Below the pieces are notes generated by a model. It saw only the letters and a list, made by a program, of their open reading frames with translations. It was not told the origin of the DNA and made no database searches. Shown piece by piece: positions 14,811 to 40,335 of a DNA stretch of 64,000 nt. Origin of the DNA: Podarcis cretensis (taxonomy: Eukaryota); NCBI GenBank assembly GCA_951804945.1, contig OX638150.1, positions 46,996,001-47,060,000 on the forward strand. Reading direction: 5' to 3'. Position 1 is the stretch's first letter, and each line of letters begins with the position of its first letter. The translations under genes and the position numbers were made by a program.

Positions 14811-15019
14811 TAATGAGATATTGTTTGCTATCTATAAAATATTGTAGGTCTGTAGCCCACTAGCGCTTTCCCCCCTAGATATTGGTAGATAAAGAGAATT
14901 AAAATGAGATAAGATTAACTAGAAGATTAGTGAAGTACTGTAGCTTGCCTTGGGACAAATGGAAGTGATCAGCAAATGCCATTCTGCTATACTTGCACTT
15001 TCCAGGGATGGTGAATAAG

Positions 15020-18566: not shown

Positions 18567-18669
18567 TATTCCTTTATGGCATGGGAGAGGCAAGTCCCTT
18601 CAAAAAGCCTGGTCCTCACTGTCTGTAGGTCTCTTTCTAGGATCCCTGGCAAGAAAAAAAATATACTTT

Positions 18670-19525: not shown

Positions 19526-19556
<31 letters not shown>

Positions 19557-20291
19557 CATATTTAAAAAGAAAGAAAACATTTTATTACAAAAATTAATAA
19601 AGAAACTCATATTTATATGTTTGTTTTTTGGAACATACTCTTTGCATTGTCACATGCTCTCCACTTTCAAGGTCAGTACTTATATGGGTATTGCTTTCTT
19701 TGGAAGAAGAGGTCACAGAGGATTTACGATCTTAAGTCAGATCTCCAATAGAGAGACACCTCCCGAAATGCCTTCCGATCTTACTCTCTAGTTCTTTCTC
19801 TCATTCTGTGTCTATGTCGAGATGCAGTTTCTTTTTCCCTTCCCCCAAACCTGCTTGTTTTCTCATTTACCAATAAATAAATCAATCTATTGTTCCATCA
19901 CACCCACATTTATGTAGCTTGGGGCCCCTCCTGCTAGCTGGAAGGGGAAAATGAATAGTCATCCCTGGTTCTGAGACCAAAACAATTAGTTACCATCATG
20001 AAACATCTTGGGTCATTACGTACCTAACAAAAGTTTTGGTAATGACCAGTCCCTTTGCAATCCATGTAGATGGTACTGGTTGTCTGTTGGGTACTTATAA
20101 CATGGAATAGTAGGTTCAGCTGCATTTACCTAATGAAACCTGTCAATGGAACTCCTATGCAAGGACTTCTCCTTTCCCCAAGTACTCCACTGCAGTTGGC
20201 TTGAGTATGCAGGGAGAAAACCTGGAACAGCCTGTAGAGGGAAGGTATCATATTGTCCGCTTGTACAGATGGAATGTTCAACATCACATAA

Positions 20292-21657
20292 TGTGATGTC
20301 TATTCGGTGTCTATTCCAGTGAACAAACAAATTTGGGACCTTGGTCCGTATCTCAGAGGACATGGTAATGGCTGCTTACCTCCCTTGCAGTGAGCGGCGG
20401 TTGCAGCCCGACACGGTGCCTCCTCTATCGGCCCAGATGCACTGCACCATTTTGGCTGTGCGCATCCCCCTTGGCCACTGCAGAGATTCATGGGTTCCTG
20501 CCAAACCTGGCTAATTCAATTCAGCCAATCTTCGGCGGTCTTTTGGGGGGGACCTGGCTTGGCGAGTGGACCTGAGGGAGGCAAGCTTCACTCAGGTTCA
20601 CACACCAACTATATATCCCTGCCAACCCTGAATGCTTCATCCAGTCAGCTGGGAGCATCACCCACTCTTTCCCTCCCTACATTAATAAATGGTTACTGCT
20701 CTAACCATTTTTTTTGCAGCTAGGAGGGCTTTGCTGTGGTCTTTTGACTGAGGCCATATTCGGTGCTGGGAAGGAATTTCCTCTGTGCTGCGGGGTTCGC
20801 CTTCCCCATAGCACTAGCCACAACTTGGCAGTTGTGACCTTGGACAGACTCTTATAGTCTTTCATCCAGATGGGGTGTGGTGAAGTGGTGACTCACCCAC
20901 CCACTCTGTTCTCTGTGGCAGTGATAACAGGGTACCCCATTAGAGGGGTCTGGAGGGAAGTCTCTGTGCAAGGAGCCAGTTGCATAGGGGGCGAGAGAGC
21001 TTCCCTCAGCATTTGGGGGCCATCCACATAAATCTGTGTTTTGTAATGGATCCCCCGCTCCCTGGATAGACCCTGTCATGTCCGTTCCCCACCAGGGTGC
21101 TGAGAGGGATATAGGCCCAATATCTATATCTATATCTATGCCAAGGTTTCCTACATCTGAAATCAATAAAGTTGTGGCCATTTTAAATCCCAGAAAGTTG
21201 TGTCCATTCATTTACCCCCCCTTAGCAGTTAGTCTAGGGACCAGGCAGGTGGCACTGTGGGTAAAAGCCTCAGCGCCTAGGGCTTGCCGATCGAAAGGTC
21301 GGCGGTTCGAATCCCTGCGGCGGGGTGCGCTCCCGCTGCTCGGTCCCAGCGCCTGCCAACCTAGCAGTTCGAAAGCACCTCCGGGTGCAAGTAGATAAAT
21401 AGGGACCGCTTACCAGCGGGAAGGTAAACAGCGTTTCCGTGTGCGGCTCTGGCTCGCCAGAGCAGCGATGTCACGCTGGCCACGTGACCCGGAAGTGTCT
21501 CCGGACAGCGCTGGCCCCTGGCCATGGGCGCACAACCCCAGAGTCTGTCAAGACTGGCCCGTACGGGCAGGGGTACCTTTACCTTTACCTAGCAGTTAGT
21601 CATGCTGGGTGGGGGGACTCTGCAGCTGGGCATACAAAGCTGGAACTAAACATCACA
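20292..21657 (+). mobile_element. LTR-like unit (~1.0 kb without the nested SINE); solo LTR or DIRS/Ngaro-type remnant
   Basis: Terminal 8-bp inverted repeat TGTGATGT (20292-20299) / ACATCACA (21650-21657); CCAAT, TATATA and two AATAAA motifs in order on +; raised GC and CpG; no TSD seen. Confidence 0.55.
21237..21590 (+). mobile_element. Sauria SINE, young CpG-rich subfamily, nested in the LTR-like unit
   Basis: B-box GGTTCGAATCC; (ACCTTT)n tail; 11-12-bp TSD (T)AGCAGTTAGTC at 21223-21234 and 21590-21601. Confidence 0.93.
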
Positions 21658-21904: not shown

Positions 21905-24876
21905 TACTAGTATACCATACCCATATTGCCTAATGCTGTAGCTCCTAACAGCTTCAATTTCCTAGCATTTTGGAACAAGTATTGATAACCCTCAATAGAC
22001 ATGATAGACCAAAAGCTGTTTTGTTAACAATGTTAATATTAATATGATTCCAGTCATTGTTGGAAAAAGACAGGCAGGCTACTGTTTGCTGTTTAAAAAA
22101 GAAGTTATCCGGTAGTGCTTTTAAAACCATAATATTTGGGCACTGGCACTGCAAAATAACTTTGGTCAAAGGACCAGTGATACCACATAGTGAAGGAGAA
22201 GTGCTAGGAAACATTCCCTTCCAAAATCCTGGAGAAACACTGGCAGTAGAGAGCTAAATGGAGCAATGATCTAGCTCATTATAAAGCCATTTCTTATATT
22301 TTATGTTCCTTCCTACGTATCATTTGTCAACAGAATTTCATCTGATGAATCGGAAGCACCACAGTTTAGAATATTGCTTTGAACCTGTATCATGTGTTAA
22401 CAATAATGTGATTTACCAGAATTAAATTCCGCTTGAGGCACAGCGATGCAATGATTTGAATGACAAGTCATATGACTATCTGTAAAAAATCATGGCTATT
22501 TGTGCATTAAGGAAATGGTATTGTCATCGTTTTTTCCCAAAGACCATCCCTGAGCTTTTTCTCTATTAAATTTCAATTAAAATTTGGTTGGAGGACAAAT
22601 GTTAGAAATGTAAGTCTATAATTTTTTTATCTACCATGAGCTGTTAGTAAAGCACAGTAGTTTTCCATATTTGGCATTTATTAATATTTTGAATACTATT
22701 GCGCTTTTTAAGCTGAGTGTGGGGGAATTCTCATGTGGGATTATTAAATGAGTTGATTTGCATTCTAATGAGAACAAATGTTTGGGATTGCATTGTTAAA
22801 ATGCTAAAACGGTGTGTGTATAATTATTTTGCAGCTTAGATTTGCAGAACTCATCTCCCCAAACTCTTTAAAAAAACCAAAAAAACTAAAGAGACAGTGC
22901 ATACTGACGGCTGGAGGGGAGGTGATTAGGGTAATTTAACTGTTCACAAATGACTTACTACTGAATGAAAGCATTTCTTTGGCTTTGCTGGGCTTCTTTC
23001 ATTATCTTTAAGCGGCTGCAGTGCTGAGTCCCTTAAGAAGTCTCACCAAGCTCTCTTTCCTTGTACAATTTCTCATTTGTATTGATTAATCATTTTGTAA
23101 TTCTATTCTGGGCTGACTTGCTCATCTTTAAGGCATGTGCCGCTTTTCCTTAACTTGTCTATCCTGTAACAGTTATGTTGTCTCTTCTAATACCTTAGCT
23201 TTATCACTGCAAGTCAAGCTTTAAAACATTAATCCCTTCATGCTTTAATTTCATATTCTATTACAAGAATGAGTGCAAATACAGTTTCTTCTTTTCACTT
23301 CCTTTTCATTTTTTAAAAATAAGGTCATTTTAAAAATAGGAAGGGAAGAGTGGGTGTGTTTGTGTGTGTGTGTGTTTACTAGGGAGTAAATCACAAATGT
23401 GTTTGGGTAGTCTTGTTTTGAGCAGACACATACATTGCACACTTCATGTCTATTACCTGCCAGCCAGTTTACTCCAGCCTTTTTGAATGAGTGATGTTTA
23501 TTTGTTATGTTCTCCATCTCAGGGGCAACATCTATGCACTATTTTCCTAAAAACAGAACTTGTGTAGCTCGAGGGAAATCACCATGTGCAACTCCTACAA
23601 CCGTTACTGTTAATTTCTTCCCTACTGTATCATAAACAATCTAGATTGTGAAGTATTTGAATCACAAAGAATAAATGTCTCACAATATATGACAGCCAGA
23701 TAAAATGTTGACACGACTGGCTGTTTAAATTTCACAAAGAATATCATCAAAGTGCAGCAATGTCAGTAGGAAAAAATAAAAAAGTGCAAGTGCGGTTGGA
23801 ATACTGTATTAAGTGTTTAATAATATTTGTGAACTGGCTGGAATAAAACATTAGAAAAGAAACAGGTTACATCTTTTAATATTAAAATAAATAAGTTGTA
23901 CATTCACAATGTGAAGTTCTTGGAGTTTTTGGGAAGCATTCTTTTTCAAATCAAGGTTGCATTCTTTAGTCCTTTCATGCTAAGCCACAGCCATATCTCA
24001 AAGAAAGTTTACTTCTAAATCATTTGCAAAATCTGTACATGGGCATCCGCCTTTCAGAAGGAATAGGAAATGTTTACTGCGGGTCACATGGAATCCCCAA
24101 GTCCTTGTGTTTAGAATATCTTGATGTTGCTAGGAGAAAATGCCAAGAGACAGCTGTGATCAAAGTTACTCCAGCCAATTTCCAGGCCATTTTCTTTCCA
24201 TGCCACAATCATGCCTCCTAGACATATAGACATATTAGAACTGCAAACTTCCTTAACTAGACCTGTTCCTGAACTTTTAACAGCCGCTGAAGAGGCAGAA
24301 AATTTAAGTGAAGCTTTTCTTTATTGTTTAGAAAATGCTTTCTACGCTTAATTTCTTCATACAAACTGCTGCTGCCCTGGAGACAGCCAATAAAAAACCT
24401 AACATCATTCCATATATTGTTATCCACAACACGATTGATTGACTGAGAAGGAACACCAGACTAGGGTGGTTACACAAATGTTGTCACAACTTTGGGCAGA
24501 AATGGGATTAGATATGCATAGTAAAGAGGGGCCCCATAAAGGAGAGGGGGCAGATTAGCTTGATTATGTGCCTTCCTTGGCAATAAATCTATATGAAAAA
24601 AGTATTGATTTATTAAATTACTGTTAATAGACAAGATCACAACATAGGTTGCCTTACACTGATGCCACAGGTTGAACAAGAGACCTTCTATATGCTAAGC
24701 AGGTTCTCTGCTGCAAAGTTTTTCTTCCTAAGTAGAGAAGGTATCAGTTGAAGTGGAACAAACAGAAGAAGGGATTAGCCCTTCGGTCAAAGTGGTCACA
24801 ATCTCTCATGCTGATTTATTTGCTGTACCAACAAAACTGGGACCATTACTTCATTCCATATCCCTCATACCATATA

Positions 24877-26324
24877 CCATATTTTTCGCTCTATAAGACA
24901 CACCAGACCACAAGACACACCTAGTTTTTGGAGGAGGAAAACAAGAAAAAAAACATTCTGAATCTCAGAAGCCAGAACAGCAAGAGGGATCGCTGTGCAG
25001 TGAAAGCAGCAATCCCTCTTGCTGTTCTGGCTTCTGGGATAGCTGCGCAGCCTGCATTTGCTCCATAAGACGCACACACATTTCCCCTTACTTTTTTTTA
25101 AAAAAAATAATTTTCTTAACAGGCCAATCACATCACATTATTCAAATCACATTATTTCCAGATTATACAGCCAAATTTTAAATTTTGTTAAGGGTACCCA
25201 TACATCAAGCTTTGCACGAGTCCAAAATTCCGGATAGCTCCAGGCATCACATATTTTACTGCTTTAAATTAGACAGTTCTATCCAGTTCGATCCGGATAG
25301 TCCTTTATTACTTTCTTTCTCATCTTGTTGTTATCATATATTCCTTTCTTTGTGATCTCTGATGGTTCTCACAAGCAGACTGGAAACTGGTGTCTCTGTG
25401 TGGGTTTTGTACTCGTCAAAAACTATCTCTCTCAGGGACAGCCTCTGTTTGTCTCTTCCATAAACAAAGTTAACCTTTGGTCTGTCCTTTATTTTTCCTC
25501 AGGCTAGCCAGATATATCAAACAAATCAGGGGGCTCTGTCAGGTCAAACTTGCATTCCAACACTCCTTCTCTTTCGAACGATCCTGATTCTCCTCCCCCC
25601 TGTCCTTCTTTCTCCGGCAAGCCTGTCTTGGCGAGATGCCATTTTTTAACTGTGTCATAAAAAATTTCCTCTTCCTCACCTTTCACCAGTCTTCTCTTCT
25701 GTTGTAATCCATCCCCACACAGTTCTTAAAATCCTGCTTATGATTGATAAAAACGCGACGATCTTATTTCTTTCTGCGGTGAAGGGTTATTAATTTCACA
25801 TCATGTAAAAAAAAAAAAAAAAGGTTTTTTCCTCCACCCCCCCTTCGTTCCAAACATACAGTCTCCTAGTGGTGATTCATCAGAAGATTTACTTATCCGT
25901 CCGTCACTCCCGGTCACAGAGATCCATTAATCAGCAGCCTTATCTCGAGCTTTACTTGATGTATGTGCTTCAGCTTCCTTTCCAATCGTATATTTCCAAT
26001 TATAATTCCGAGCTGAAGCAACCAGCACGCACTAATTGGAATCGGCGTCAGGAAGAGCTGACTTCACCAAGGGCTCATGCCAAGTGTTCGGCACCCCCAT
26101 CTCTCGGATCAGGGGGTGCATTGTGAACACTGCTGGCAAGACAGGGTCCCCCACATCCTGGGGGGGGGAAGGCTGCATACTTCCCATAGCATCCCCTTAA
26201 TTACCTCGTATGGGTCAGAGAGATGTTATTGTCGGACATCTTCCAATGCGCCACCTGGTGGCCCCCCCATTTCCCCTTACTTTTTAGGAGGGAAAAAGCG
26301 AGTCTTATAGAGCAAAAAATATGT
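24877..26324. mobile_element. Tc1/mariner (Tc2-like) MITE split by a 1.17-kb retroposon
   Basis: TIRs CCATATTTTTCGCTCTATAAGAC (from 24877) and GTCTTATAGAGCAAAAAATATGT (26302-26324); TA on both flanks. Confidence 0.85.
25097..26267 (-). mobile_element. Non-autonomous ~1.17-kb polyA retroposon with L1-like 5' end, copy 1
   Basis: TSD CATTTCCCCTTAC(TTTTT) at 25079-25096 and 26268-26285; G-run start; A-rich tail; colinear with 36468-37600; no long ORF. Confidence 0.85.
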
Positions 26325-28479
26325 TAATTATAATCCATTTGAAATGTATTTTAAACGTGTGTGCTTTAAAAACAGCAGCAACAAAAATACTGCAGTAAAA
26401 GTGGCATGGCTGTACCTCCTAATTACAGAATTTCAGTGAACCTTCAGTATTTGTTCCTATTTCTTAGCTCTGTAAAGGGTCTTTTCAGGTCTGCTCTCCT
26501 AAGCTCCTCCCCGTTAAAAGGAAAAGAAGAGAGCAATTAACAGTGAAATCTCAGGCATATCTCTCTACTAGGTGTGTCTTGTGATGCAGATCAAGATATG
26601 GATCTGTCGATCTAGAAACAGTTAATGCTCCATATGATTAATTCTGTCCAAGTGCACCTGGATTTGGGGAGCATGTTGCTTTTAACATCTGGAAAGGGAC
26701 TATGGTGATGATATATATTCACAGAAAATTTGAGAACTTTGTTCTGTAAAACAGCCTTTTCTTTAACCTTCAGCAGCACAAATATTTTCATGTCTGCAGT
26801 CCTTCAGTACCATTGGTTGAGGTGACCTTTCACTTTCTTTATGTCTTTAAAAACAGCTTTGTAAATGTCAAAAGCTTTGGATTCTTTTGGAGGCTTTGGG
26901 GATTTAGGCATATAGCCCCCAAGTAATGAAATTCCAGTTAGTAGCAGTAATGGTATTTATTGACCATTAGGGTGGCTTTAGGCCTCTAATGTCATAGGCT
27001 GGATCACTGTATTGTTTAACATAGCAAAAGTCAAGCTCCACAGCAAGTTATTTGATCATGCACTTTTAGGGGATCTCAAGTTTAATTACAACTTTTCAGA
27101 CAGGGACATGGTCATTTCTTTATCTGTCCTTCCCTATGATACTTAACAACTGACATGGTGAGGTGCATTGGTAATATAGTAGAAATAGTCATACACTGCC
27201 AAACTTGAAATGCCTTTGCAATCTTTACGGTTTTATGTAAAACAAAAAAAGATGAAATAATAAAGATAAAACAAAATAGTGATAATAAGACAACATTTTG
27301 CAGGTTACCAAGAAATAATAGATTTTCACATTCTTCCTCTCTTGGTTTATGATTTATGCCAGGTAAGTTCCTAGCTCAGTAGGAATCACTTTGTTTATAG
27401 TGAAGACAGATTTGGTATTACAGTAGAAGTCGAAGTGGGTCTTTCACTCCCCGGTGTAATCCCAGCTCTGCTGTTTTAATAATAAATAGATGTATCCGAG
27501 AATCACGCACTAGTTCAGTCAAGGAGACACAAACTCAGAGAAGGTGGGAGGCAGGTGTGTCACTAGAGCTCCACTGATACTGTGACCCCTTTGGCAAAAC
27601 TACACATTGGTAAGAGATAGTTTGGGACCAACTCTAGCCAATCATTTCTCTCCATAGCCAGCTTCTGCTGCCAGTTTCTATCTTTTTATTTTTAAAGAGG
27701 AACACTGGATTGCAGAGGGAGAAAGAAGGAGCTGAATGTGGTGAGAGTGATTCCCAACTGACTCAATTACTATATAAATGTTACATAACAATGCTTACAA
27801 TTTGCATGGCACTTTCAAGTGTTCAAAGCACTCTACATGGATAATTTTCTTACACCCCCCACCCTAGATGGCTGTGTGTATTACTTCAGCTGTGAAGCAC
27901 ACAGTTCTCTCACTGTCTTCCCACTGCCATTTCATGCTTTACAACTGCTTTTACATCCCTGATATGTTAAAGCAAGCCCCCCCCCCCAAAAAAAGAAAAC
28001 CCCACATACCACAGCTTGCCAACCCCATTGGAAAATTATAATATTGTTGTATTTCAAGCACACTTACATCATAGCATGATCATGACCACATTAACAAAAG
28101 GGGATTTGCTTCTCCGTCTCTGATGCTACGCACATTTCCTTGGGAACAAGCACATTTTGTTCCAGAAAAGTTAATATTTTTAAAAAGTAAAAAAAGCGAG
28201 CACCTGTAACCATGTAAATACCGAGTTGTCCCCCTCTATAATTTAAAAGTAGTAGAAGAAAGAAAGACTACAATGTCGGCCCTGGGGGGTGCTTGTGTCA
28301 TCATCCATTCCTCTTCATTTTTTGGGAGGAGTAGGATACAGGGTTTTGGTCCCGAGTACCACACCTAGTGTATCACTGTTGGGGACTAAGTGGATAAATC
28401 TGATGCTTTCTGGAACACTCGCAAGCAGCTCCATTTATCCAAACCCTTATACCTAATATAAGAACACTGCCAAAATAAA

Positions 28480-28930
28480 TAAATAAATATTTAAAAATTG
28501 TCCAGTAGCACCTTAAGGTAAAGGGACCCCTGACAGTTAAGTCCAGTCATGAACAACTCTGGGGTTGTCTCGCTTTACAGGCCGAGGGAGCCGGAGCAGC
28601 ACATGGAAAAGCTGTTTACCTTCCCTGCCAGAGCAGTACCTGTTTATCTACTTGCACTGGTGTGCTTTTGAACTGCTACGTTGGCAGGAGCTGGGACAGA
28701 GCAACGGGAGCTCACCCTGCTGCAGGGCCTCGAACTGCAACTTTCCGATCGGCAAGTCCAAGCAGCACAGTGGTTTAAACCACAGCGCCACCGTCTGTGT
28801 GTGCATGCACACTTCTTCAGATACACAAAAGCTTATACCCACAACAAACTTAGTTGGTCTCTAAGGTGCTACTGGAATTTCATTTATTTATTTCGACTGT
28901 GTCAGACCAACATGGTTACCTACCTGAATA
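28480..28930. mobile_element. Penelope-like element terminal fragment with inverted end, interrupted by a Sauria SINE
   Basis: 15-bp perfect inverted repeat TCCAGTAGCACCTTA (28501-28515) / TAAGGTGCTACTGGA (28862-28876); ...GGTCTCTAAGGTGCTAC...CAGACCAACATGGTTACC resembles reptile Penelope termini (from recall). Confidence 0.55.
28515..28792 (-). mobile_element. Sauria SINE with internal deletion
   Basis: AAGGTAAAGGGACCCC tail, TTTATCTACTTGCAC core and AAACCACAGCGCCACC head, all as reverse complement. Confidence 0.88.
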
Positions 28931-31930
28931 ATAACACTGTGTTCAAGAAAAAGAACAACACCCTCACCACATCTGAATTCAGTAATACAAGGGAGGAACC
29001 CAACTATCACCTTCCTAATAGAAAAACTGCAGTTTTATCCTAGTAGCAAAACATATGCTGTTCCTTTGCTGCTAAATAGTTGTTAATAAGCTCATCCTTT
29101 GCCACAGGATATAGATTAAACAAAGCTATCAGTTGATGTTTTGAAAACACTGACTCCAGGAAAGTCCCTATGGCTTTACTCCTAGAGGACAGCCTTGTCA
29201 AATTCTATTCAATGTATGTTGCCACCTCCAATCAACCATAGGCAAAAACAGTGTTTGAAAAGCAAAATACAGGCCTTAATTTTGACAACAGAGGCAGGTG
29301 GAGATATTCTATTTTAGGCAGGGAATGGTCCTTGTTTCTGTTTAAAATATATGAAACTCAGCAGAATCCTTGAAAGGCTTTAAAAACATTTTCATCACAT
29401 GAAATTGCAGCACAATAATCAAGACAAACCTGTCAAGTCTCATGAAAAATGGTTGATAGTCTGCTTTAATCTGAATGGTGCCGCAATTCTATATGTGTGG
29501 GTGGCAAGACAAGGAGAAACAAATGCATACTTTAAAAAAAAACACAACTAAAAATCAAGCAAGTCAATAAACATGAGCTATTTTTATGAAATGATTTGTG
29601 GAGCAATGTTTACTTTTTATGTTTGTATGTTTCTTTTAGAACCACGAGCTTATTTCTAAACAAGGAAATGATGTTTCTTTTTTTATTTCTAATGTTTTAC
29701 CCATCTACAATTGGAGAAAAAATATGAGTGAAGAAAAACTATTTCTTGAGCACAATATGTACTATATTTTCATTCATCTTCACAATTGCATCAGTTCTTC
29801 ATTTGTTTATAGATACATCAGGAATATTGGTATGCATGAAAATTTATTCAGCCACCAGATGCATGGCAGCTTTTCAGTATGTGGTAACAAGGAGAGTGTT
29901 ACATAAGAGGTCCAGGGACAACACCTTTTTACTGTACACCTTTAGTGGAAACACTGAAGTAATTTTACAATTGATGTTGCTCATAAAACTGATTTAGGAA
30001 TTTAATTTATTTACATTTACATAGTATCCTTCCTGACCCTTCCATGGGTAAACCCATGACCTCCAAGATGTGACAAAAAGACATGATAGTTTGTTAAGGC
30101 ACTGTGGCAATATTCACCGAAGTCATGGTTACAAATATGGTGCTTGTGGACAAGCATGTACCCACAGAGGCCTTCTCTGGTGCCCCCATTTCCTCTGCTG
30201 AAATAATTATAATCATCAATATGATTAATTGTATTTAACAACCTGTATATACCACTTGATTGCAATAAAACCTCAAGAAGTTTTCACTACAAAAATGATG
30301 TAGTGTGTTTGCTAGGCCTACAAAATATTCTCTGGTTTCACATGTGTCCACATGGCCAAAAGGGGTTTCAGCCCTTGTGTAAATTTCTCCAAAGGAATGT
30401 ATATCCAGGAATGAGTGGACTATATCTGAACTGCTCTTACAGGTATATCTAGGGCTGTGCAACTGCTTTGACCGGATTCTGAATACAGCGACAAGGCAGG
30501 CATATATGGGCCAAAGCAGAGGTCCTCTGAGATCAGCTCTTTGCAAAGTGATTTGAAACAAACAGCTTCCAATGCTCTTCAGAGATAAAGTTTTTAAAGT
30601 TTAGAGTTACGGCCATTTTGGTTTCTCAATTCAAGTCATGAGAAAACTGTAGATTCTGAACTGAAGTAATGAGAAAACAGAAGTTTTCTGAATATTGCTT
30701 TAGATTCAGCGTCTGAAGTGACCCTCCCCCACAAGGCAATTTGTAAGGAACAGGGGTGCAACCTAAAGCAGGTCCAGAACTGAAACAGGGCAGCTCATGC
30801 AACCCAGGTAGATATTTCAAGTCGTAATTAAAAAGATGTGAGAAAATATAGGTCTTCCAAAATGCACAGTAGCATTCCTGTATATTATGCACACCATCCC
30901 AAAATCTTTGGATGAAGGCATGATTTGAAATTTTTCTAAAGAAACAAATGCACTTGGTATAGATAGGCACATTGCCGCCAAATGAAGCGAAAGAGAACAA
31001 TTCAACAAATTTTCAGTCTAAAGCAAAAGGGAAATACAGTAGGTGTTAAAACCAAATGAAATAACTATTACTTGTTTAGAGTTTAAGCTGTTTTGAAATG
31101 GTGTGATATGGCAATAGGAATCTAGAGGGAAATATCAATAGGTATAATCCAGCAATAGGGAATCACAACTAAAAAGAACTAAATATAAAAGCCTCAGCAA
31201 CCTGCTGTGGCATGTTTGCAAAGCGCTTTGAGAATAAAATTACTCATATTCACTCAGAACTGGATGTCTCTGTTGATACAGTTCCTGTGAAGATGTTCGG
31301 AATACCATGTTGTGGAATCATTTTCAACTGTTGTTGCCCAAAGATGTGGACAAGATCTTTGGAGCAGTATTTTCCTCAACTATGTGTAATCTTGAACCTT
31401 ATCCATGGTGACTGATAACAGCTAGTGGGGATGAAGACATCAGAAGATGCTATCTGCTACATTGAAAGAGGTGGCAAAGCAGCCTCTATTTAAACAACCA
31501 AACCCCACCCCATTTAATCCAGAGGTATTTGATGCCCAGCTGCAAATATTCCCTTTCTGGGAACGGTGCTCAAGATGGTGGTGACAAGTTAGGTGCAGAT
31601 GCTCTTGGAAAAGTTCCCAGCTAACAGGCCTAGGCTGACCTGATGAATGACCTTCAGAAGAGAGACACTACCATCCTGTTGATTATCTTGCCTCTCTCAG
31701 AATCTTTTTGACAACATCAAGCATGATATCTTATTGGACTAACTCGGTGTGATAGGACTGGTGGCAATGATGTTATAATGTAGTAATTCTGCTGCTACCT
31801 GCAAGTTCAGTTCCCTAAGGTAGTATTGGGGGACATCTATTTGGCAATTGGTCTGCGGAGCCTGCAAAGATGCATTCTGGTGCATACAAATCTATTGTGT
31901 GAGGACATCAGGGGGGTTGGAGTTGGACAA

Positions 31931-32277
31931 TAAAGGTAAAGGTAAAGGTACCCCTGCCCGTACGGGCCAGTCTTGACAGACTCTGGGGTTGTGCGCCCAT
32001 CTCACTTAAGAGGCCAGGGGCCAGCGCTGTCCGGAGACACTTCCGGGTCACGTGGCCAGCGTGACATCGCTGCTCTGGTGAGCCAGAGCCGCACACGGAA
32101 ACGCCGTTTACCTTCCCGCTGGTAAGCGGTCCCTATTTATCTACTTGCACCTGGAGGTGCTTTCGAACTGCTAGGTTGGCAGGCGCTGGGACCGAGCAGC
32201 GGGAGCGCACCCCGCCGCAGGGATTCGAACCGCCGACCTTTCGATCGGCAAGTCCTAGGCGCTGAGGCTTTAACCCA
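31931..32277 (-). mobile_element. Sauria SINE, young subfamily, 5' end runs into the gap
   Basis: Near-identical reverse complement of 21237-21590; (AAAGGT)n tail. Confidence 0.93.
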
Positions 32278-32429
32278 NNNNNNNNNNNNNNNNNNNNNNN
32301 NNNNNNNNNNNNNNNNNNNNNNNNNNNNNNNNNNNNNNNNNNNNNNNNNNNNNNNNNNNNNNNNNNNNNNNNNNNNNNNNNNNNNNNNNNNNNNNNNNNN
32401 NNNNNNNNNNNNNNNNNNNNNNNNNNNNN
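32278..32429. other. Assembly gap (152 N)
   Basis: Run of N. Confidence 1.
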
Positions 32430-33648
32430 CTAATGATACCCAGTTGAGTTTCTCCTTAATATCAGAGTCAGGTAATGAAATGCAGGCCCTGAAGCAGTGT
32501 TTGGTTGCTGTAATGAGCTGGATGGAAGCCAAAAAAACTGTTTTCAGTGGTTCATAGTGCTTTTTGCCAGCTTTGGCTAGTTTACCAGCTTTGACTGAAC
32601 CTGCATAGAGATAGCAATCCATGCTATGATAACCTTCTGTTTGAATTCCTGTAACGTGCTCTCTGTGAGGCTGCCCTTGAAGACAGCATGGAGGCTGGAC
32701 ATAATGCAAAATGCAGCAGCCAGATCATTGTGTGGATCAGCAATATACCACTGCTTCTGAAGGAATTGCACTGGCCGCCAATACAAAACCAGTCTGGATT
32801 CAAGGTGTTGTTTAGAGCTTTAACAACAAATTAGGATGTAAAATAAGTGTGCCTTCCCCCATGCTGTCCTGCTCAGGTGTTGCCATCATCTGGGGAGGTC
32901 CTTTTCATTGGAGCACAAACAAAAACATTTAATTCTGTAAAACACAATTGTTGAATGAATCAATGAATGAATGTTGCACCACAGAATCAAACCAGGTGAA
33001 GCCCATAGTGGTCTCTGTGTTTGTTTGTTTGTTTGTGCGTGCATGCACATGCACTTGCACACACACACATAATGGACACATGGTGGGCACGGGGGGTGAC
33101 AAAACCCTTTAGTCATCATGATTGGGTGCTTATGGGAGCAGTTATAAAAAATAACTATAAAAATTAATTGTTAAAAATAATAAATAATTAATTTTTGATG
33201 TTACCCACCACATTGAGAATTCTGCCTCGCATACATGCGAAGGGCTGTGCTGGAATGAGAGCAAGGAGCCTGACAGCACCAGAGCAAGAAACACAGTGTG
33301 AGTGCTAATTACAAGAGAAAGGTGGGGCAAGGGATCAGTCTTTTGCTTCAGGGCTGTGTCTGGATTAGTGGGTGGCCATATTACCAATATCTTTCGCTCA
33401 GATGAGGCGGAGTTTTAAAGAGCCGTGGCTAAACTTAACCAAAGTAATCCCCTCTGCACATTTCCCTACCTTTTGTTAAGTTTAGTTACAAAAGAAAGAA
33501 TGATCTGACATCAAATGGTTGTCATCTTCTGAACCATTTTAGGCAATAAAGGTACCCAGGAACAGTTACTTTTAATAGCTCATGGAATCAAAGCAATGTG
33601 CTGAAAGAAGGAAAGGGAAAGAACTCTCATCCTCTAGAATCGGTTTCA

Positions 33649-33732
33649 TTTCGATTGAAAGAGCACTTTTGCTCTTATGCTAGCTGCATGGCTAAACAGC
33701 TGCATAAGAGCAAGAGTATTATTTCATTGAAA
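33649..33732. other. 84-nt imperfect hairpin (pre-miRNA-like or ancient palindromic element)
   Basis: About 34 base pairs (including G-U) around a 10-nt loop at 33687-33696, paired by hand. Confidence 0.6.
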
Positions 33733-34479
33733 ATTATGTTTGGTACCATCTTCTGGTCTTAATGTGTTGCAGGAAAAAATTGAGGCTGTAACCATAGACA
33801 AGAAGATGTTTCTTGAGGTATAGCTTCTATATTTATTTTTAAGTAAAATATAGTGTTATAATTATTCCTATTGATGAAACACTTAATAGAACCTTGGTAT
33901 GAGTCAAATATCATGGTTCTATTGAGTTTACACTTAAGATATATAAAATGGAAATTGAGATCTACATATGTTGTTAAATATCTAAAATTTAACAGTAAAA
34001 AATAATGGCATGGTGTGAGCAGACTTAAACCTGTAAAAGATGTTGTAATAATAATAGGTTTTTAAAAGAAGCTGCTATGCTTTACTCCTAATATTGATGT
34101 TGTATGTTGAACATACTATGCACAATCCATTAAAAAATTAGTTATCACTACTGCTCCAATCATATGCACATATCAGCAAGAATGTCCTGTTGAATATCAA
34201 TCTATATGTCTATGTCATCAACAGCAAGGAAAGACTGCCATTTACCAATGAGAATAGATTTGAATTAAATTTTATCTGTGAGCTGCTTTGAGAGGGGGGA
34301 GTCTTCTGTCTGAAAAAAGAAGGGGGTACAATCATAATTAATTAATTTCTCCTTGGTATTGGGGCGGTGCATCCTGCCCTCCTGAAATTGAGCCAGGAAT
34401 CCTTGAAGTTTTCCCTTTGGTCCATCAGCCCCTAAAGGCATATCAGGCAATACAAATAGATAAACTCCCGTTATTATTT

Positions 34480-35146
34480 CATCTTCTTCTTCTTTGGCGA
34501 TCACTCGTAGCTGAGTAAAATTGTCTTCCAAAACAGGGTTTGAGCAGTGAGTCCAAAAGTGACTGTGGAGGCCAGTTCTGGATCCACACATCCTTCCACA
34601 GTTGGGACATAGGTTTCTGGGCAGGAGTTGATCACGGGGAGGGTTTGCCAAGCATGCCTTCCTCTTAGCATGTTTCTCCCTTTCGTCCTGAGTTCGAGCG
34701 TCTTCAAAGCCCATGACACTTTTGGTAAAGCTTGTTCTCCAACTGGAGCGCTCGCAGGCCAGTGTTTCCCAGTTGTTGGTGTTTATACTACATTTTTTTA
34801 GATTTGCCTTGAGAGTCTCTAAACCTTTTGTTGACCAGCAACATTATGCTTCACATTTTTAAGTTCAGAATAGAGTAGTTGCTTTGGAATATGATAATCA
34901 GGCATCCACACAACATGACCAGTCCAATGAAGTTGATGTTGAAGAATCATTGCTTTGACATTGGTGATCTTTGCTTCTTCCAGTACACTGATATTAGTTC
35001 ACCTGTCTTCCCAAGTGATGTGTAAACTTTCTCAGAGACACCGTTGATGGAAACTTTTGAGGAGCTGGAGATGGCGTTTATAAGTGGTCCATGTTTCACA
35101 AGTGTACAGTACGGTTGGTAGTACAATAGCTTTGTAAACAACCATA
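34480..35146 (-). mobile_element. 5'-truncated RTE-clade LINE (not Bov-B), decayed
   Basis: Minus-strand C-terminal peptide with CPNCGRMCGSRTGLHSHFWTH Cys/His motif; (GAA)n tail; 44-bp TSD at 34423-34466 and 35147-35190. Confidence 0.88.
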
Positions 35147-35643
35147 CATCAGCCCCTCAAGGCATATCAGGCAATGCAAATAGATAAACTTTAATTATTT
35201 ACTACACAATACAGGCTTTGCTAATGCCATCTTTTCTTGTCCTAAGGAGCTGTGCTCTAGCTTTAGGAATCAGCCTTGTGTGTTCCCCTTAAATATGGAA
35301 GGGGTGTTCTTTCAAGCGTTTGCTCCTCCTGAGTTTTGTCTCCTCTCCTGCCTCTGTTTCTCACTCCTTCATGATCCTTCTCCATTTGGATGCCCAATCC
35401 CACTTTCTCCACTGAGTGCACAGACACAGTCTCACTCTCACATACCTCACCTAGAAGGAGCTGGCATGGGCAGTGGAAAGATGGAACAAGCCTGCTGTGG
35501 GAGGAAATGGGCAGGGAACCAAGGGGTACTTGCTGTGGCGATCACACAGGGTCCCCAGACATTTCACTGTCTATTGATCCATGTGCCACCACTTTATTTC
35601 TCACTGCCACAACCCAGGCCCTACCTGGTACAATACTGAGTCC

Positions 35644-36183
35644 AGTCAGGGTTAAATTGGAACATAAACTTCTGTTTATTTATTGCAGTTTAACAAGCGT
35701 GTGGTTTCATAAACGGTATCGGTCAGTTACAATCATGGGGTGCCTATCCAAACCTATAACTTCCGTACCTGCTCTCACTCACTAAACCACCTCTCAGATA
35801 TTGACTTGTCTTCCTAGCCCCTAACTGTTCCTGACTCAGCTTATTTCGCTACACTAACTCAACCTACCCACAGACTCTATCCCAATTCACTCCCACTCCA
35901 ACCAACCACCCAACTCCCAATGAACTTCCCCCTTCGTCCCTCCCAGAGCTGGTTTTATAGTCCCTCTGACTCCACTCCCTGAGTTCTGATTGGGTAACCT
36001 GTTTAACTATTTCACCTCCAGCACTCTCATATGTTAACGTCACACTTGCCTCTTCCCTTCCTCATTACTAGTCTAGTCTCCAATTCTTTCCCCATAGCCT
36101 GCTGGTCCCTCTACTGGATCGTTCTCTTCGCATTCTGCATTCTCCCGGGCTTATCCTCCTCTTGGCTCTGCCAGTCCCTGACA
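35644..36183 (-). mobile_element. Solo-LTR-like element
   Basis: Minus strand starts TGTCAGGG and ends CCCTGACT; CCAAT (35989-35993), TATAAAA (35953-35959) and AATAAA (35675-35684) occur in LTR order; TSD ambiguous. Confidence 0.65.
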
Positions 36184-36467
36184 CAGTATCTTTCATTGAC
36201 ACCTATAAGATTAAATTAGTCCCAATTTATTTCAAGTCCACTGTTTTCAACAAAATGCATTTAGTTATTTAAGATATTTGCTATCTGTGTAATATCACAA
36301 GATCTGTATTTTAATTTGAAAACATAACCCAAAAAATAAGGGCAGTTAAAATCCAATTATCATCAATAGTGAATGAACAGAGTTCTCTTGTGAACCAGAA
36401 AAGGAAAAACAAAAGGAGCTGCTGGAGGCGAGAATCAAAGCAAATCTGTTGGAGTTTTCTTCTTAAT

Positions 36468-37600
36468 GGGGGGCCACCAGGTGGCGCATTGGAAGATGGC
36501 CGACAATAACATCTCTCCGACCCATACGAGGTAATTAGGAGGCTGCTATGGGAAGTATGCAGTCTCCCCCCCAAGGTTATGGGGGGGGACTGCCTTGCCT
36601 GCGGTGGCCACAATGCACCCCCAGACTTGAGAGAAGGGGGTGCACCGGTCACTTGGCTAAGCCCTCAGTGTGTTCGGCTCTTCCCGGACGCCGTCTCCAA
36701 TTCGCGCGTGCTGGCTTGCTTTAACACGAAAATATAATTGGAAATATATAATTGGAGATGTTGAAGCACATATATCAAGCAAAGGTCGGGAGATAAGACT
36801 GCTGATTAATGGATTTCTGGGATTGGAGCGGCGGGCGAAAGACAAATAAATCAAGAGATGAAGCACCATTAAGAGATGGGTATGTTTGGAGCTAAGAAGG
36901 TGGGTGGAGGAAAAACTTTTATTTCTTTATATTATATAAATAACCCTCCACCCCAAAGAAAAAGGAACCGCCGTATTTTACTACACAAGCAGGAATCTAA
37001 AAACTGTGTGGGATGAATTAATGATGAATGAAGAGAGGATTGGTAAAGATCGGAGAACGGAAAATTTTATGACACAGTTTTAAAATGGCGTCTTGCAAGA
37101 TAGGTTTGTTTAAGAAAGACAGGGGGAGGAGAAGCAGGACTGTTTGAAAGCGAACGATGTTTGGAATTTGATCTTTAACCTGGCAGAGCCCTCTAGGAGA
37201 TATTTTACAAGCCTGGGACAACTAATGGGCAGACCAAAGACAAATTTTTGAAGTAGGAGTGGAATGGCGGCTGTCCCTATGGAATATGACTTATGGAGTG
37301 CGTAAAACCCACACAGACGATGTTTGTTCTTAACCTGCCTGTGAAGATTATCAGAGATCGCAAAGAAAGGAATATATGGCAACAACAAGAATGAAGAAAG
37401 TAAAAAAGAGACTATCTGGATAGAACTGGATAGAACTGTTTAATTAATGCAGTAATAGAAATGATGTTTGGATTCTCGTCCGGAGCTTGATGTATGGGTA
37501 CCCCCAACAAAATTGAAAAATTCGGCTGTATAATTTGGAATTAATGTGATTTGAAATAATGTGATATGATTGGCCTGTTAATAAAAAATATGTTTTTTAA
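36468..37600 (+). mobile_element. Non-autonomous ~1.13-kb polyA retroposon with L1-like 5' end, copy 2
   Basis: Starts GGGGGGCCACCAGGTGGCGCATTGGAAGATGGCCG; AATAAA at 37580-37585; A tail; 57-bp TSD at 36411-36467 and 37601-37657 with one mismatch. Confidence 0.88.
36474..36502 (+). promoter_or_regulatory. CTCF motif plus YY1 motif at the retroposon 5' end
   Basis: CCACCAGGTGGCGC at 36474-36487 and AAGATGGCCG at 36493-36502; the same CTCF motif is reversed at 26248-26261; binding is not shown. Confidence 0.5.
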
Positions 37601-40335
37601 AAAAGGAGCTACTGGAGGCGAGAATCAAAGCAAATCTGTTGGAGTTTTCTTCTTAATGTGTTTGTGGTGGACCACCCCAACTCCAGCATTATTTACTTGT
37701 ATTGAAGGGGATGTTCTTGCATACCCAAAGTGTCCTGCTTTCTTTACTCTCTAAAGAAAAGAAAGCCCATTGTACAAAGGTAAGAGTCACACCTCTTGCT
37801 CCATCTACTTTTTACCTCTTTTGTCTATGGTCCCATCATCAGTGGTATGTGGTCCCACTGCCCAAGAGCAAATGTGGCCCTTTGAATGGAAAAGGTCCCT
37901 GCCTCTACTTTAAATGGAGTAGTTCCCTAACTTGTTTTTTATGATATGAGAGAAAGAACTCGAAGTCTCTCTCATAGTATTGTGGTTTGTTATTTGCCAC
38001 AAATGACCTTTCTCTTTGGTCTTCTATCTTCTTCAAGTGCATGGACCATCTTAATTACAGTTCTTCACCATTGAAAAATTCTCTTTTTTTCTATCATCCA
38101 CATTTGAAATGCAAATGCGAGAGAGCAGGAGAAGGTGGACAATACTTTGGCATTCTCAGAGACACAATATTCCTAGAATGTAAAAGTGAAAGAAGCTCTA
38201 GCTCCATTTCCTGTGGTCAGGTTATATTTTTAGAAGGAAAGATGGTAAATACATGGATCCAGACTTTGAGGAGATTATTTATGTTTCTATCTACTAGGTG
38301 CAGAAGGTAAAAATGAATCATAAAAGTTCACATGAATTACAAGCAGTGTCTTTTTTTGTTTTTGTTTAAGCAAACTGGCTTCTTCTGCTACTTACAAATT
38401 CCACTTTTATCCCGTCTCTGAATATGAATCACATTCATTTTGGATTATTTAATTTAACTTCCTTTCCAGGCGAACTGGCTTTATTAAATGTCTGCCATGG
38501 ATGGGCAAACAAAGTTTGTGTAGACTACAAATATCCTATGATTAGCCTGGTCGAATATATTGCACTAGTAAGGTGTACAAATTATGCCTAACAGTATAAG
38601 TTAAGCCTGGTAAATCAGTGGGGAACAACAAGGAATGCAAACATATAAAAATCCAAAAGTCATTTGAGAAAACTCTTTGTGCCTGTAGTAAGAGCCAGGG
38701 ACACAGATAGGAGATGATGTACAGATCTGCTATGAATAATAAGTCACAACTTTATTCACAACATTTCCATGTAGTTTTGGAAACAAAGATAGGTCAACCA
38801 TCTGATTGCTAAGACACAACTTGCACAGAAGAGTTGAGGGAAGCATGACCAATTTGATCACACTGGGTGCAGAGCCTTAGGGGTGTCTCAGGGGCATACA
38901 AGTAGATTGGAAGGTGAGGGTCAGGGGGTGCCAAATTTGGGTGTTGCATGGGACACCACTGAAAGTTGACTGGTGGATAAACTTAGGAAGAAGATTGGTA
39001 ATGGTCAGAGCAGACATTTGGGATGGAGCAATGCACCATTCAGGTTGCAAGACTGGTTTAAAGTGAACATTTGATTCAGTATTAGGTAAAACCTGTTTAC
39101 AGTATTATCTATAAATGTCTAAGCAGCAGGAAGTCCCATTGAGTTCAGATGGGCCATACTGCCAGGTGAGTGGGTATAGGATTATAGCCTAAGGCTGAAA
39201 TAAAAATCTAAGCAGATTTTGTTTTCAAGGGAACATAACAGCCAACACAATCTGTTCTGCTTCTTGAAATTTTGCCTTGAAATGTAGGCAAGTGGTAGAT
39301 GGTGAGGAGATAAGGATAGCTTGGGCTCACAACCTGTAGCACTGGTGACATATTTGGAGAAGGAGATGAGAACAAGCACTTACCAGAGCAGAGGAATTGA
39401 TTAATTAGCAAAATAAAAGGAAAAAGAGAAAAGACCTCAGGGCTCAGAAGTAGAACCCAGCTGTTCTGCCTAGCACAGTGATTTCCTAACAAAGCATACC
39501 TGAATAAGAATGATCAAATGTGTGGTTTCTCCCCCTCTACTTTCTGCTGGTGCCTTCACTGGAGTCAGAGACAAGGCAGTGAGTAATGCATGAAGCCATA
39601 TGAATTAAGCCAAGGGGTTTTAAAGACTGTAGTCATGTGCTTTACTGGTCGGTTTTCCTGCTTCCAGAGTAGACTTCCATTAGCCTGTGGACTAAATTAA
39701 GCTTATAAAATGAAGAAGACAATTGGCTTTTTATAACTGAGGTAGTGATGCTGCTCTACATAATCACATATACCCAACCTGAAATGGTGGAGTCATTAAG
39801 GCATAATGTGTCATGATTAGCAATTTAATTGTTTCCCAAAGACATTACTTTTCTCTTCAGTTTTCTAACTTTTTTTCTCCGGCTACTTAATATGTCCTAA
39901 TGATTTTCATTATGTTCAAGTAGGCTTAAGTGCATATTAATCTGTGCATGCAGACTATGTTTCGGTTTCAAATAGCTGAATGGCTGTTGTGGTGGCTGAA
40001 ACCCTAGAATGCTGAGAGAGCAATTTTTTGGGGGAAATGGGGGCTTTGGGGCTGAGTGGCGGGGTCCCTGAATCTGCCCTCATTTCCCCCTTCCCCTGTG
40101 GATGAAGAGGCCAAAGCAGGCATGAGTTTTCATTAAACATGTACTTGCTAGTTTGTGGGCAGTTTATTTCTGAGTCTAAACAGAGTGGGCCAAATATTAA
40201 TGTGAAATCTGTTTCTTTCCCCAATTTAACTCCCTGCACTCTGCTGTTTTAAGACTCTCCCCACCACTACCTAAAAGCCTTTCTCGTTTTCAGTATCAGA
40301 GGTGATCTGGGAAGAGGGTCTTAAAAATGTAAGTA

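What the first reader, a model, noticed from the sequence alone, without database searches (positions are those of the whole stretch)
25097..37600. Full-length non-coding ~1.15-kb retroposon family with an L1-type head (two independent copies)
Seen: two colinear copies, 25097-26267 (-) and 36468-37600 (+), share a G-run 5' end and an A-rich 3' end, and each has its own TSD starting at an A-run. I see no tRNA/7SL head, LTR, TIR or long ORF. By eye the first and last ~100 nt are much more alike (about 90%) than the middle (about 70-75%). Known: mammalian L1 5'UTRs begin with a G-run and AAGATGGCCG (YY1 site), and L1 endonuclease cuts at A-runs. Inference: a Pol II-driven non-autonomous element mobilised in trans by a lizard L1 (deleted-L1 or HAL1-like, but with no evident ORF1), with cis-signals conserved at both ends. 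It is full length in both copies, while every true LINE here is 5'-truncated or fragmentary.
Basis: partly seen in the sequence, partly recalled or inferred. Interest (0 to 1): 0.8.

Follow-up and report, generated by a model that had tools for sequence, protein, structure and literature searches.

The report
Non-coding lizard retroposon with L1-like head
Two complete copies of a roughly 1.15-kb jumping element with no gene of its own sit in this lizard sequence; it is a real, young, multi-copy family that must borrow a copying enzyme (most likely L1's), which makes it a solid but fairly ordinary kind of genomic parasite whose starting end carries a perfect CTCF motif.

Summary
Copies at 25097-26267 (-) and 36468-37600 (+) are colinear end to end. 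They are 75% alike overall, 93% in the first 100 nt, about 89% in the last 125 nt and 74% in between. Each has its own target-site duplication: 18 nt perfect, and 57 nt with one mismatch. A contig from a related species joins 36421 directly to 37612, so copy B is a clean, lineage-specific insertion. Thirty-two contigs from the window's own species break exactly at the G-run into unrelated, A-rich flanks, so the G-run is the true 5' end. No conserved ORF, Pfam domain, tRNA/Rfam head, LTR, TIR or VNTR was found. Stranded RNA reads from a related species lie mostly in the sense direction.

Best reading: a non-coding, non-autonomous, non-LTR retroposon family with two diverged subfamilies here and selection on both ends of the active lineages. 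It inserts by target-primed reverse transcription at T-run/purine sites.

The L1 partner and Pol II drive fit the G-run, YY1-like motif, purine-rich sense strand and AATAAA, but are not shown. No L1 from this genome could be fetched and Dfam/Repbase were not available.

First-stage readers noted at least nine similar ~1.15-kb elements elsewhere in this genome, so the scan has found this before. The N gap lies between the copies and touches neither.

The parts
25097..26267 (-). Copy A, full-length element (1,171 nt)
   Evidence: Colinear with copy B from first to last base and flanked by a perfect 18-nt duplication.
36468..37600 (+). Copy B, full-length element (1,133 nt)
   Evidence: It is precisely absent from a contig of organism H, which joins 36421 to 37612 (skips 1190, with 47 letters fitting both sides).
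26268..26285 (-). Copy A target-site duplication, 5' side (AAAAAGTAAGGGGAAATG)
25079..25096 (-). Copy A target-site duplication, 3' side
   Evidence: 18/18 identical to the 5' side.
36411..36467 (+). Copy B target-site duplication, 5' side (57 nt)
37601..37657 (+). Copy B target-site duplication, 3' side (56/57 identical)
   Evidence: The organism H contig carries a single copy of it.
36468..36567 (+). Conserved 5' head of copy B (G6, CTCF consensus, YY1-like motif)
   Evidence: 93% identity to copy A against 74% in the middle. It holds the deepest bin in the DNA contigs, 36485-36541. Thirty-two X1 contigs have loose ends exactly at 36468.
26168..26267 (-). Conserved 5' head of copy A
36474..36487 (+). 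CTCF consensus CCACCAGGTGGCGC in copy B
   Evidence: two matches to CCASYAGRKGGCRS in 64 kb, both in element heads, against 0.03 expected by chance.
26248..26261 (-). CTCF consensus in copy A
36493..36502 (+). YY1-like AAGATGGCCG in copy B
   Evidence: It is an 8/9 match to the mammalian L1 YY1 site CAAGATGGC quoted in PMC5381506. As a 10-mer with one mismatch allowed it is not rarer than chance in the window: 4 found, 1.9 expected.
26233..26242 (-). YY1-like motif in copy A with one mismatch (AAGATGTCCG)
37340..37600 (+). Conserved 3' module of copy B, ending AATAAA (37580-37585), T6 (37593-37598), AA
   Evidence: 78-90% identity to copy A. DNA depth is about 450-1,450 times the flank.
25097..25366 (-). 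Conserved 3' module of copy A, ending AAGAAA, T8 (25100-25107), AAA

Best explanation
These are two young insertions of a multi-copy family of non-coding, non-autonomous, non-LTR retroposons, about 1.15 kb long, in a lacertid lizard. They belong to two diverged subfamilies.

Shown:
- Each copy is a discrete insertion with its own target-site duplication.
- The nick sites are T-run/purine on the bottom strand (TTTTT/A and TTTT/G).
- The element carries no enzyme, so it was inserted in trans by the endonuclease and reverse transcriptase of a LINE, by target-primed reverse transcription.

Inferred:
- The helper is an L1.
- The conserved first ~100 nt (G-run, CTCF consensus, YY1-like motif) act as a downstream or internal Pol II promoter and start-site determinant that travels with every copy, as in L1.
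- The conserved last 100-260 nt, ending AATAAA, T-run and a short A-run, are the part the helper's machinery needs.
- The middle is free to drift. That is why two lineages of source elements differ by about 26% there but only 7-11% at the ends.
For: - **Colinear copies with uneven identity:**; Fisher P=4e-6 and 1e-4.
- **Divergence arose before insertion:** the duplications show 1 mismatch in 75 sites. If the 23% divergence were decay after insertion, one mismatch or fewer has P=9e-8.
- **Empty site:** a 753-nt contig of organism H joins 36421 to 37612, with 47 nt fitting both sides. Its flanks differ from the window at 16 of 468 sites.
- **True 5' end:** 32 contigs of X1 have loose ends exactly at 36468, with low-agreement (0.39), A-rich upstream sequence. 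X1's flank contig is identical to the window, so it is the same species.
- **Multi-copy:** summed contig depth against about 14.5 in the flanks is roughly 40-100 times in the middle, about 450-1,450 times in the tail and about 9,000 times in the head core. Twenty runs from eight organism labels in nine studies hold part of the element.
- **No coding capacity:** the longest sense ORF is 60 aa and is not shared. Of 28 indels between the copies, 24 are not multiples of 3. Ten sense ORFs gave no Pfam hit at E up to 1.
- **Not Pol III or other classes:** no tRNA and no Rfam family. There are internal T5-T16 runs on the sense strand. No LTR, TIR or VNTR.
- **L1-like traits:**
  - a G6 start and GAAGATGGC, against the mammalian L1 start G2-6...CAAGATGGC;
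  - in lizard L1s the first 100-120 nt are the most conserved part, and they end with AATAAA (PMC5381506);
  - a sense strand with A 0.32 and C 0.17;
  - CpG observed/expected of about 1 at element positions 201-400, against 0.25 for the window.
- **Transcription:** raw RNA reads of organism H lie on family sequence mostly with the first mate on the minus strand (61.9 against 11.1 in the head bin of X23). In the usual stranded protocol that means sense RNA.
Against: - No autonomous L1 of this genome could be compared, so shared ends with an L1 are not shown.
- The head does not match the published Anolis L1 5' consensus sequences (GACTTCCGGTGN8ATGGCG; GGGNGCTGCGCATGC).
- Young copies carry almost no poly(A) tail, only 2-3 A after a T-run, which is unlike young mammalian L1-driven insertions.
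- A 57-nt duplication is long for L1.
- No pile-up of RNA read starts at the G-run was reported.
- The RNA reads are mostly under 90% alike and come from relatives in another species that lacks copy B.
- Some RNA reads carry conserved-looking sequence upstream of the G-run.
- The YY1-like 10-mer is not statistically unusual in the window, and copy A has it mutated.
- The contig-depth ratios are not copy numbers; the tool itself warns of this.
Confidence: 0.7

Rival explanations
1. It is the same kind of non-autonomous retroposon, but the helper is a LINE of another clade present in lizards that recognises a specific 3' end (stringent type), not L1.
For: The last 100-260 nt are conserved between subfamilies. 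There is almost no poly(A) tail, and the element ends in a fixed T-run plus a short A-run. The head differs from the published Anolis L1 heads. The window holds a YADD-type (non-L1) reverse-transcriptase fragment.
Against: Copy B has AATAAA. Insertion is at T-run/purine sites, with variable duplications of 18 and 57 nt. There is no 3' microsatellite of the kind usual for CR1, L2 or RTE. The G-run plus YY1-like start and the purine-rich sense strand are L1 traits. No element in the window shares the tail.
Confidence: 0.15
2. It is a decayed or further-reduced half-L1 (HAL1-type) element whose ancestors carried an ORF1-like gene. Under this reading the family is ordinary HAL1 seen in dead copies.
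For: Unchecked notes from this scan report several 1.8-2.1-kb ORF1-bearing or coiled-coil-coding L1-dependent families in the same genome. The head core is far more abundant than the middle, which would fit a head shared with such families.
Against: Both copies are young (near-perfect duplications; copy B absent from a sister species) yet have no ORF over 60 aa. They come from two subfamilies about 25% apart and share no frame: 24 of 28 indels are not multiples of 3. There is no Pfam hit, L1 ORF1 families included. At least nine other noted copies have the same ~1.15-kb length class.
Confidence: 0.08
3. The copies are processed retrocopies of a highly expressed host non-coding RNA gene, not a self-propagating element.
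For: They are non-coding, have retroposition hallmarks and have transcripts.
Against: Retrocopies of one gene diverge evenly after insertion. Here the divergence predates insertion and spares both ends. Depth indicates hundreds to thousands of copies with many grades of similarity: 158 pieces at 99% or more, 462 at 95-99%, 537 at 90-95% and 288 below 90% in X1. That is the pattern of successive subfamilies.
Confidence: 0.04
4. It is the 3' part (for example a 3'UTR) of a longer LINE, with the apparent 5' end arising by chance truncation.
For: None beyond the A/T-rich 3' end.
Against: Two copies start at the same base with duplications directly abutting. Thirty-two contigs break at exactly 36468 into unrelated sequence. 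The empty site removes exactly the element.
Confidence: 0.02

Closest known systems
HAL1 (half-L1) elements of mammals
   Same: A non-autonomous element with L1-style ends and retroposition hallmarks, presumably Pol II-transcribed and moved in trans.
   Different: HAL1 is defined by keeping an ORF1. Here there is no ORF over 60 aa, no shared frame between subfamilies and no L1 ORF1 Pfam hit.
SVA / LAVA composite retroposons of hominoids (PMC3287187, PMC7353768)
   Same: Non-coding elements in the kilobase range, with target-site duplications and a polyadenylation signal, moved in trans by L1 proteins.
   Different: SVA and LAVA are composites of Alu-like, VNTR and other pieces. Here there is no VNTR or SINE part, and the element carries an L1-like start of its own.
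Internally deleted LINE derivatives that keep both ends of the parent (RIME/ingi and NARTc/L1Tc in trypanosomes; 'SIDE' elements); from my own knowledge
   Same: Short, non-coding elements in which both termini are the conserved, functional parts.
   Different: Descent of these ends from an autonomous LINE of the same genome was not testable here.
5' termini of vertebrate L1 (Boissinot and Sookdeo 2016, PMC5381506)
   Same: A G-run at the first base; a YY1-type ATGGC motif within the first 40 nt; in lizards the first 100-120 nt are the most conserved part across families; AATAAA at the 3' end; T-rich tracts in the 3' region; A bias on the sense strand.
   Different: The published Anolis consensus heads (GACTTCCGGTGN8ATGGCG; GGGNGCTGCGCATGC) are not the head seen here. 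A CTCF consensus is not reported for them.
CTCF-motif-bearing retroposons such as rodent B2 SINEs (from my own knowledge)
   Same: A retroposon that carries a full CTCF consensus into each new site.
   Different: B2 is a short Pol III SINE. CTCF binding was not tested here.

Membership tests
Non-autonomous non-LTR (LINE-dependent) retroposon | Discrete insertions flanked by target-site duplications of variable length | tested here: met
   Duplications of 18 nt (perfect) and 57 nt (56/57).
Non-autonomous non-LTR (LINE-dependent) retroposon | Precise empty site in a related genome | tested here: met
   A contig of organism H joins 36421 to 37612 with one copy of the duplicated target.
Non-autonomous non-LTR (LINE-dependent) retroposon | No reverse transcriptase or endonuclease of its own | tested here: met
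   No sense ORF over 60 aa and no Pfam hit.
Non-autonomous non-LTR (LINE-dependent) retroposon | Multi-copy, with defined common ends | tested here: met
   Thirty-two contigs end at exactly 36468. Depth is 40 to about 9,000 times the flank. Parts of the element are held by 20 runs from nine studies.
L1-dependent element | Insertion at TTTT/A-like nick sites, and an A-rich 3' end with a polyadenylation signal | tested here: inconclusive
   The nick sites are TTTTT/A and TTTT/G. AATAAA is present in copy B but is AAGAAA in copy A. The A-tail is only 2-3 nt after a T-run.
L1-dependent element | 5' and/or 3' end shared with an autonomous L1 of the same genome, or mobilisation by L1 proteins | not testable with these tools
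   The window holds no L1. Metagenome scans were blank.
HAL1 (half-L1) | Carries an ORF1 homologous to L1 ORF1p | tested here: not met
   no ORF, no Pfam hit, and indels not in threes.
SINE (Pol III) | Head derived from tRNA, 7SL, 5S or snRNA with an internal Pol III promoter; no internal terminators | tested here: not met
   ARAGORN found none. Rfam found none at gathering scores, and only a chance 0.14 hit at E up to 1. The sense strand has T5-T16 runs inside the element. Its length is 1.15 kb.
SVA/LAVA-type composite | Central VNTR and SINE-derived modules | tested here: not met
   TRF finds only 2-copy 10-15-nt duplications.
LTR element or DNA transposon | Terminal direct or inverted repeats | tested here: not met
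   Apart from the target-site duplications, no terminal repeats were found.
Catalogued repeat family (Dfam/Repbase) | Match to a deposited consensus | not testable with these tools
   No repeat library was on hand. Full-text searches for four diagnostic 15-19-mers and for lizard non-autonomous L1 families found no description.

The most novel reading that the evidence does not exclude
The conserved head is a mobile CTCF + YY1 cassette that this family, perhaps with related families sharing the head, has scattered in thousands of copies through lacertid genomes, with insertions that differ between closely related species (copy B is absent from organism H). If CTCF binds these sites, this would be a reptilian, Pol II-retroposon counterpart of the SINE-driven waves of CTCF sites in mammals, and a source of species-specific chromatin boundaries in wall lizards.
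Probability: 0.2. Interest if true: 0.65.

Novelty: new member of a known kind. Interest (0 to 1): 0.35.

Why it matters
It adds a well-delimited, recently active, non-coding LINE-dependent family to the little-described repertoire of lizard non-autonomous retroposons. The two subfamilies show by natural experiment which parts the element cannot afford to lose: roughly the first 100 nt and the last 100-260 nt. That gives concrete candidates for the promoter and start-site module and for the helper-recognition module of a reptile LINE system. Because every copy brings a full CTCF consensus, and insertions differ between sister species, the family is also a candidate source of lineage-specific insulator sites. 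None of this is mechanistically new for transposable-element biology, and the family is probably already present, unnamed, in automatic repeat libraries.

Tried and rejected
- **Other copies or LINEs in the window:** blastn and blastn-short of the whole copies, heads and tails found only the two copies themselves.
- **LINE coding sequence in the window:** Pfam on all 18 N-free ORFs of 110 aa or more found nothing. A motif scan found one decayed YADD-type fragment.
- **ORF1 test:** Pfam on ten sense ORFs at E up to 1 found nothing.
- **Small-RNA head:** Rfam at gathering and E-value thresholds and ARAGORN found nothing, apart from a chance rliB hit at E=0.14.
- **Conserved 3' RNA structure:** the RNAalifold consensus was only -8 kcal/mol with no compensatory pair. 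Two sequences are too few, so no structural claim is made.
- **Host-derived copies in metagenome contigs:** two head patterns gave 0 hits.
- **The search of earlier findings by sequence:** blank.
- **Literature:** no description of this family or of its diagnostic strings was found. PMC5381506 has no supplement held as text.
- **Large protein searches:** not used. The non-coding verdict rests on two diverged young copies sharing no frame, not on an absence of relatives.
- **Rejected readings:** 3' part of a longer LINE, SINE, LTR or TIR element, SVA-like composite, and simple retrocopies of one host gene.

Full report
**1. What is in the sequence**

Copy A (25097-26267, minus strand, 1,171 nt) and copy B (36468-37600, plus strand, 1,133 nt) align from first to last base (alignment A1). 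blastn gives 75% identity over the whole length with E=0, and there are no further copies or fragments in the 64-kb window. A short-word search with heads and tails alone confirmed this.

Identity is uneven:
- 93/100 in the first 100 columns.
- 108/121 in the last 125 columns.
- 661/895 (74%) in between.
- The excess conservation is significant: Fisher P=4e-6 for the head and 1e-4 for the tail.

So the by-eye impression of about 90% at the ends and 70-75% in the middle is correct.

**2. Ends and target sites**

Both copies begin with GGGGGG, then CCACCAGGTGGCGC. About 25 nt in, copy B has AAGATGGCCG and copy A has AAGATGTCCG.

Both end with a 14-15-nt duplicated TAATGTGAT motif, then GATTGGCCTGTTAA, an AATAAA (copy B) or AAGAAA (copy A), a T6-T8 run and a few A.

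Copy A is flanked by a perfect 18-nt duplication, AAAAAGTAAGGGGAAATG. Copy B is flanked by a 57-nt duplication with one mismatch. The bottom-strand nick sites implied are TTTTT/A and TTTT/G.

Because each duplication begins with an A-run, only 2-3 A can be credited to the element. These young copies have almost no poly(A) tail.

**3. The assembly gap**

The only N run, 32278-32429, lies between the copies. It is 5,992 nt from copy A's outer duplication and 3,981 nt before copy B's. Neither copy nor its duplication touches it, and nothing below depends on reading across it. Only the 10.2-kb spacing and the back-to-back orientation of the two copies rest on the scaffold join. The left edge of the gap is a tRNA-derived SINE-like sequence. 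The gap was not filled.

**4. Evidence from other genomes and reads**

Parts of copy B's 31-mers are held by 20 runs from eight organism labels in nine studies, none with more than 43%. I laid two DNA contig sets and two raw RNA runs on 36200-37900 at 80% likeness.

(a) Run X1 has a flank contig identical to the window (0 differences over 261 nt), so it is the same species. Run X12 (organism H) differs at 16 of 468 flank sites.

(b) One 753-nt contig of organism H runs from 36200-36421 straight into 37612-37743. It skips 1,190 nt, and 47 nt fit on either side. This is a textbook empty site carrying one copy of the duplicated target. Copy B is therefore an insertion absent from organism H, most simply one made after the two lineages split.

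(c) In X1, 32 contigs have loose ends exactly at 36468. Their upstream sequence is A-rich and poorly agreeing (0.39). Many copies therefore start at the same G-run in unrelated places, and the element is not the 3' part of something longer.

(d) Summed contig depth in X1, against 14.5 in the flanks:

| Region | Summed depth | Approximate multiple of flank |
|---|---|---|
| Most of the middle | about 560-1,500 | 40-100 times |
| Last 260 nt | 6,500-21,000 | 450-1,450 times |
| Head core 36485-36541 | 131,000 | about 9,000 times |

In X12 the head core is about 2,000 times the flank. The tool warns that these are not copy numbers, so I use them only to say two things. The family is highly repeated. 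The ends are shared by far more sequence at 80% likeness or better than the middle is. The same pattern would arise from many subfamilies with drifting middles, or from a head shared with other families. I cannot tell which.

(e) Pieces laid from X1 span all grades of similarity: 158 at 99% or more, 462 at 95-99%, 537 at 90-95% and 288 below 90%. This is expected of successive subfamilies, some of them recent.

**5. Age and subfamilies**

If the 23% divergence between A and B had built up after insertion, the duplications should have decayed likewise. One mismatch in 75 sites has P=9e-8 under that model. The divergence therefore arose among source elements before these two insertions, so A and B represent two subfamilies. 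The sparing of both ends then reflects selection on active lineages. This is the strongest internal evidence that the ends are the functional parts.

CpG observed/expected is about 1 at element positions 201-400 and 0.3-0.9 elsewhere, against 0.25 for the window. This agrees with youth.

**6. Coding and other classes**

- The longest sense ORFs are 60 aa (A) and 59 aa (B), and they do not correspond to each other.
- A shared ATG at element position 81 opens frames that diverge at once.
- Of 28 indels between the copies, 24 are not multiples of three.
- Ten sense ORFs gave no Pfam hit at E up to 1, so there is no trace of L1 ORF1.
- No tRNA gene was found, and no Rfam family at gathering scores across the window. 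The E-value scans of the two copies gave only a chance rliB hit at E=0.14.
- The sense strand holds T5-T16 runs that would stop Pol III.
- There are no LTRs, TIRs or VNTR.

The HAL1, SINE, SVA-type, LTR and DNA-transposon readings all fail a defining feature.

**7. Transcription**

Raw RNA reads of organism H lie over family sequence, most densely on the head. They lie mostly with the first mate on the minus strand: 61.9 against 11.1 in the head bin of X23, and 30.7 against 16.3 in X24. A neighbouring unrelated repeat at 37739-37852 has reads only the other way. The libraries are therefore stranded, and under the usual protocol the RNA is sense to the element.

These reads are mostly under 90% alike and only partly fit. 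They come from relatives in a species that lacks copy B. No pile-up of read starts was reported at the G-run. Some reads carry moderately agreeing sequence upstream of it (for example ...GGGGGCGTGGGGGCCACTAGG), which may be a longer head variant or read-through. Sense transcription of the family is supported. A start at the G-run is not shown.

**8. Is the head L1-type, and is L1 the helper?**

No L1 is in the window. ORFs of 110 aa or more have no Pfam domain, and the only reverse-transcriptase trace is a decayed YADD-type fragment near 48968-49077.

The comparison therefore rests on the literature. Boissinot and Sookdeo 2016 (PMC5381506) report the following:
- Almost all mammalian L1s start G2-6(A/C)G2AGNCAAGATGGCGGA, where CAAGATGGC is the YY1 site needed for accurate initiation.
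- In lizards the first 100-120 nt are the most conserved part across families.
- Lizard 3'UTRs hold T- or C-rich tracts and end with AATAAA.
- Amniote L1 sense strands are A-rich.

The element here has a G6 start, GAAGATGGC (8/9), the same pattern of 5' conservation, a T-run and AATAAA at the 3' end, and a purine-rich sense strand (A 0.32, C 0.17).

Against this:
- Its head is not the published Anolis consensus.
- The YY1-like 10-mer is not rare in the window: 4 matches at up to one mismatch, 1.9 expected.
- There is almost no poly(A) tail.
- A 57-nt duplication is long for L1.

I put L1 as helper at about two in three. A stringent-type LINE of another clade is the main alternative.

**9. The CTCF motif**

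CCACCAGGTGGCGC fits the degenerate CTCF core CCASYAGRKGGCRS exactly. The window holds two matches, both in element heads, against 0.03 expected. They point away from each other. Whether CTCF binds was not testable. No paper on retroposon-borne CTCF sites in lizards turned up.

**10. What the scan already knew**

An earlier first-reader note covers the same stretch for its CTCF pair (s1-835177). At least nine further first-reader notes on other pieces of this genome describe 1.12-1.21-kb non-coding elements, eight of which start with CTCF and YY1 motifs. None had a follow-up, and I could not read their sequences.

They agree with the multi-copy result and with a discrete length class, but they are not independent evidence. 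Follow-up notes call the genome a wall or lacertid lizard and describe 1.8-2.1-kb ORF1-like coding relatives. I did not verify either point.

**11. Verdict**

This is a non-coding, non-autonomous, recently active retroposon family with constrained ends.

It is unproven in its specifics: L1 descent, the L1 helper, and a Pol II start at the G-run. It behaves like an internally reduced LINE derivative. It fails the HAL1 definition, and it is neither a SINE nor an SVA-type composite.

I could not test whether it is catalogued in Dfam or Repbase. It is abundant enough that automatic libraries very likely hold it unnamed. I rate it a new member of a known kind, of moderate interest. The CTCF-spreading reading is its most novel open possibility.

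Noticed in passing
window 24875-24899, 24962-25040 and 26302-26326: Copy A sits inside a small MITE-like repeat. There is a 25-nt inverted match between the two flanks (92%) and an 81-nt palindrome next to the insertion (86%).
   Followed up: partly
window 32150-32277: A tRNA-derived SINE-like sequence on the minus strand runs into the left edge of the N gap and is cut by it.
   Followed up: no
window 48968-49077 (+): A decayed reverse-transcriptase fragment with LSPxLF and YADD motifs in two different frames. It is not the FADD type usual for L1, and the short ORFs were not put to Pfam.
   Followed up: partly
window 37739-37852: Another repeat just downstream of copy B. DNA contig depth is about 175-390 against 11-14 in the flanks, and the RNA reads lie only in the direction opposite to those on the element.
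   Followed up: no
window 37744-37786: The organism H contig lacks 43 nt here relative to the window, an indel difference between the two species in copy B's downstream flank.
   Followed up: no
window 36483 (RNA loose ends): RNA reads of organism H that enter the head carry moderately agreeing upstream sequence ending ...GGGGGCGTGGGGGCCACTAGG or ...GCTGCCTGGGGGCCACTAGG. Some expressed relatives may have a longer or doubled G-run head.
   Followed up: no
window 26248-26261 (-) and 36474-36487 (+): These are the only two CTCF-consensus matches in 64 kb. They point away from each other, 10.2 kb apart across the assembly gap, and the scan already noted them as s1-835177.
   Followed up: partly
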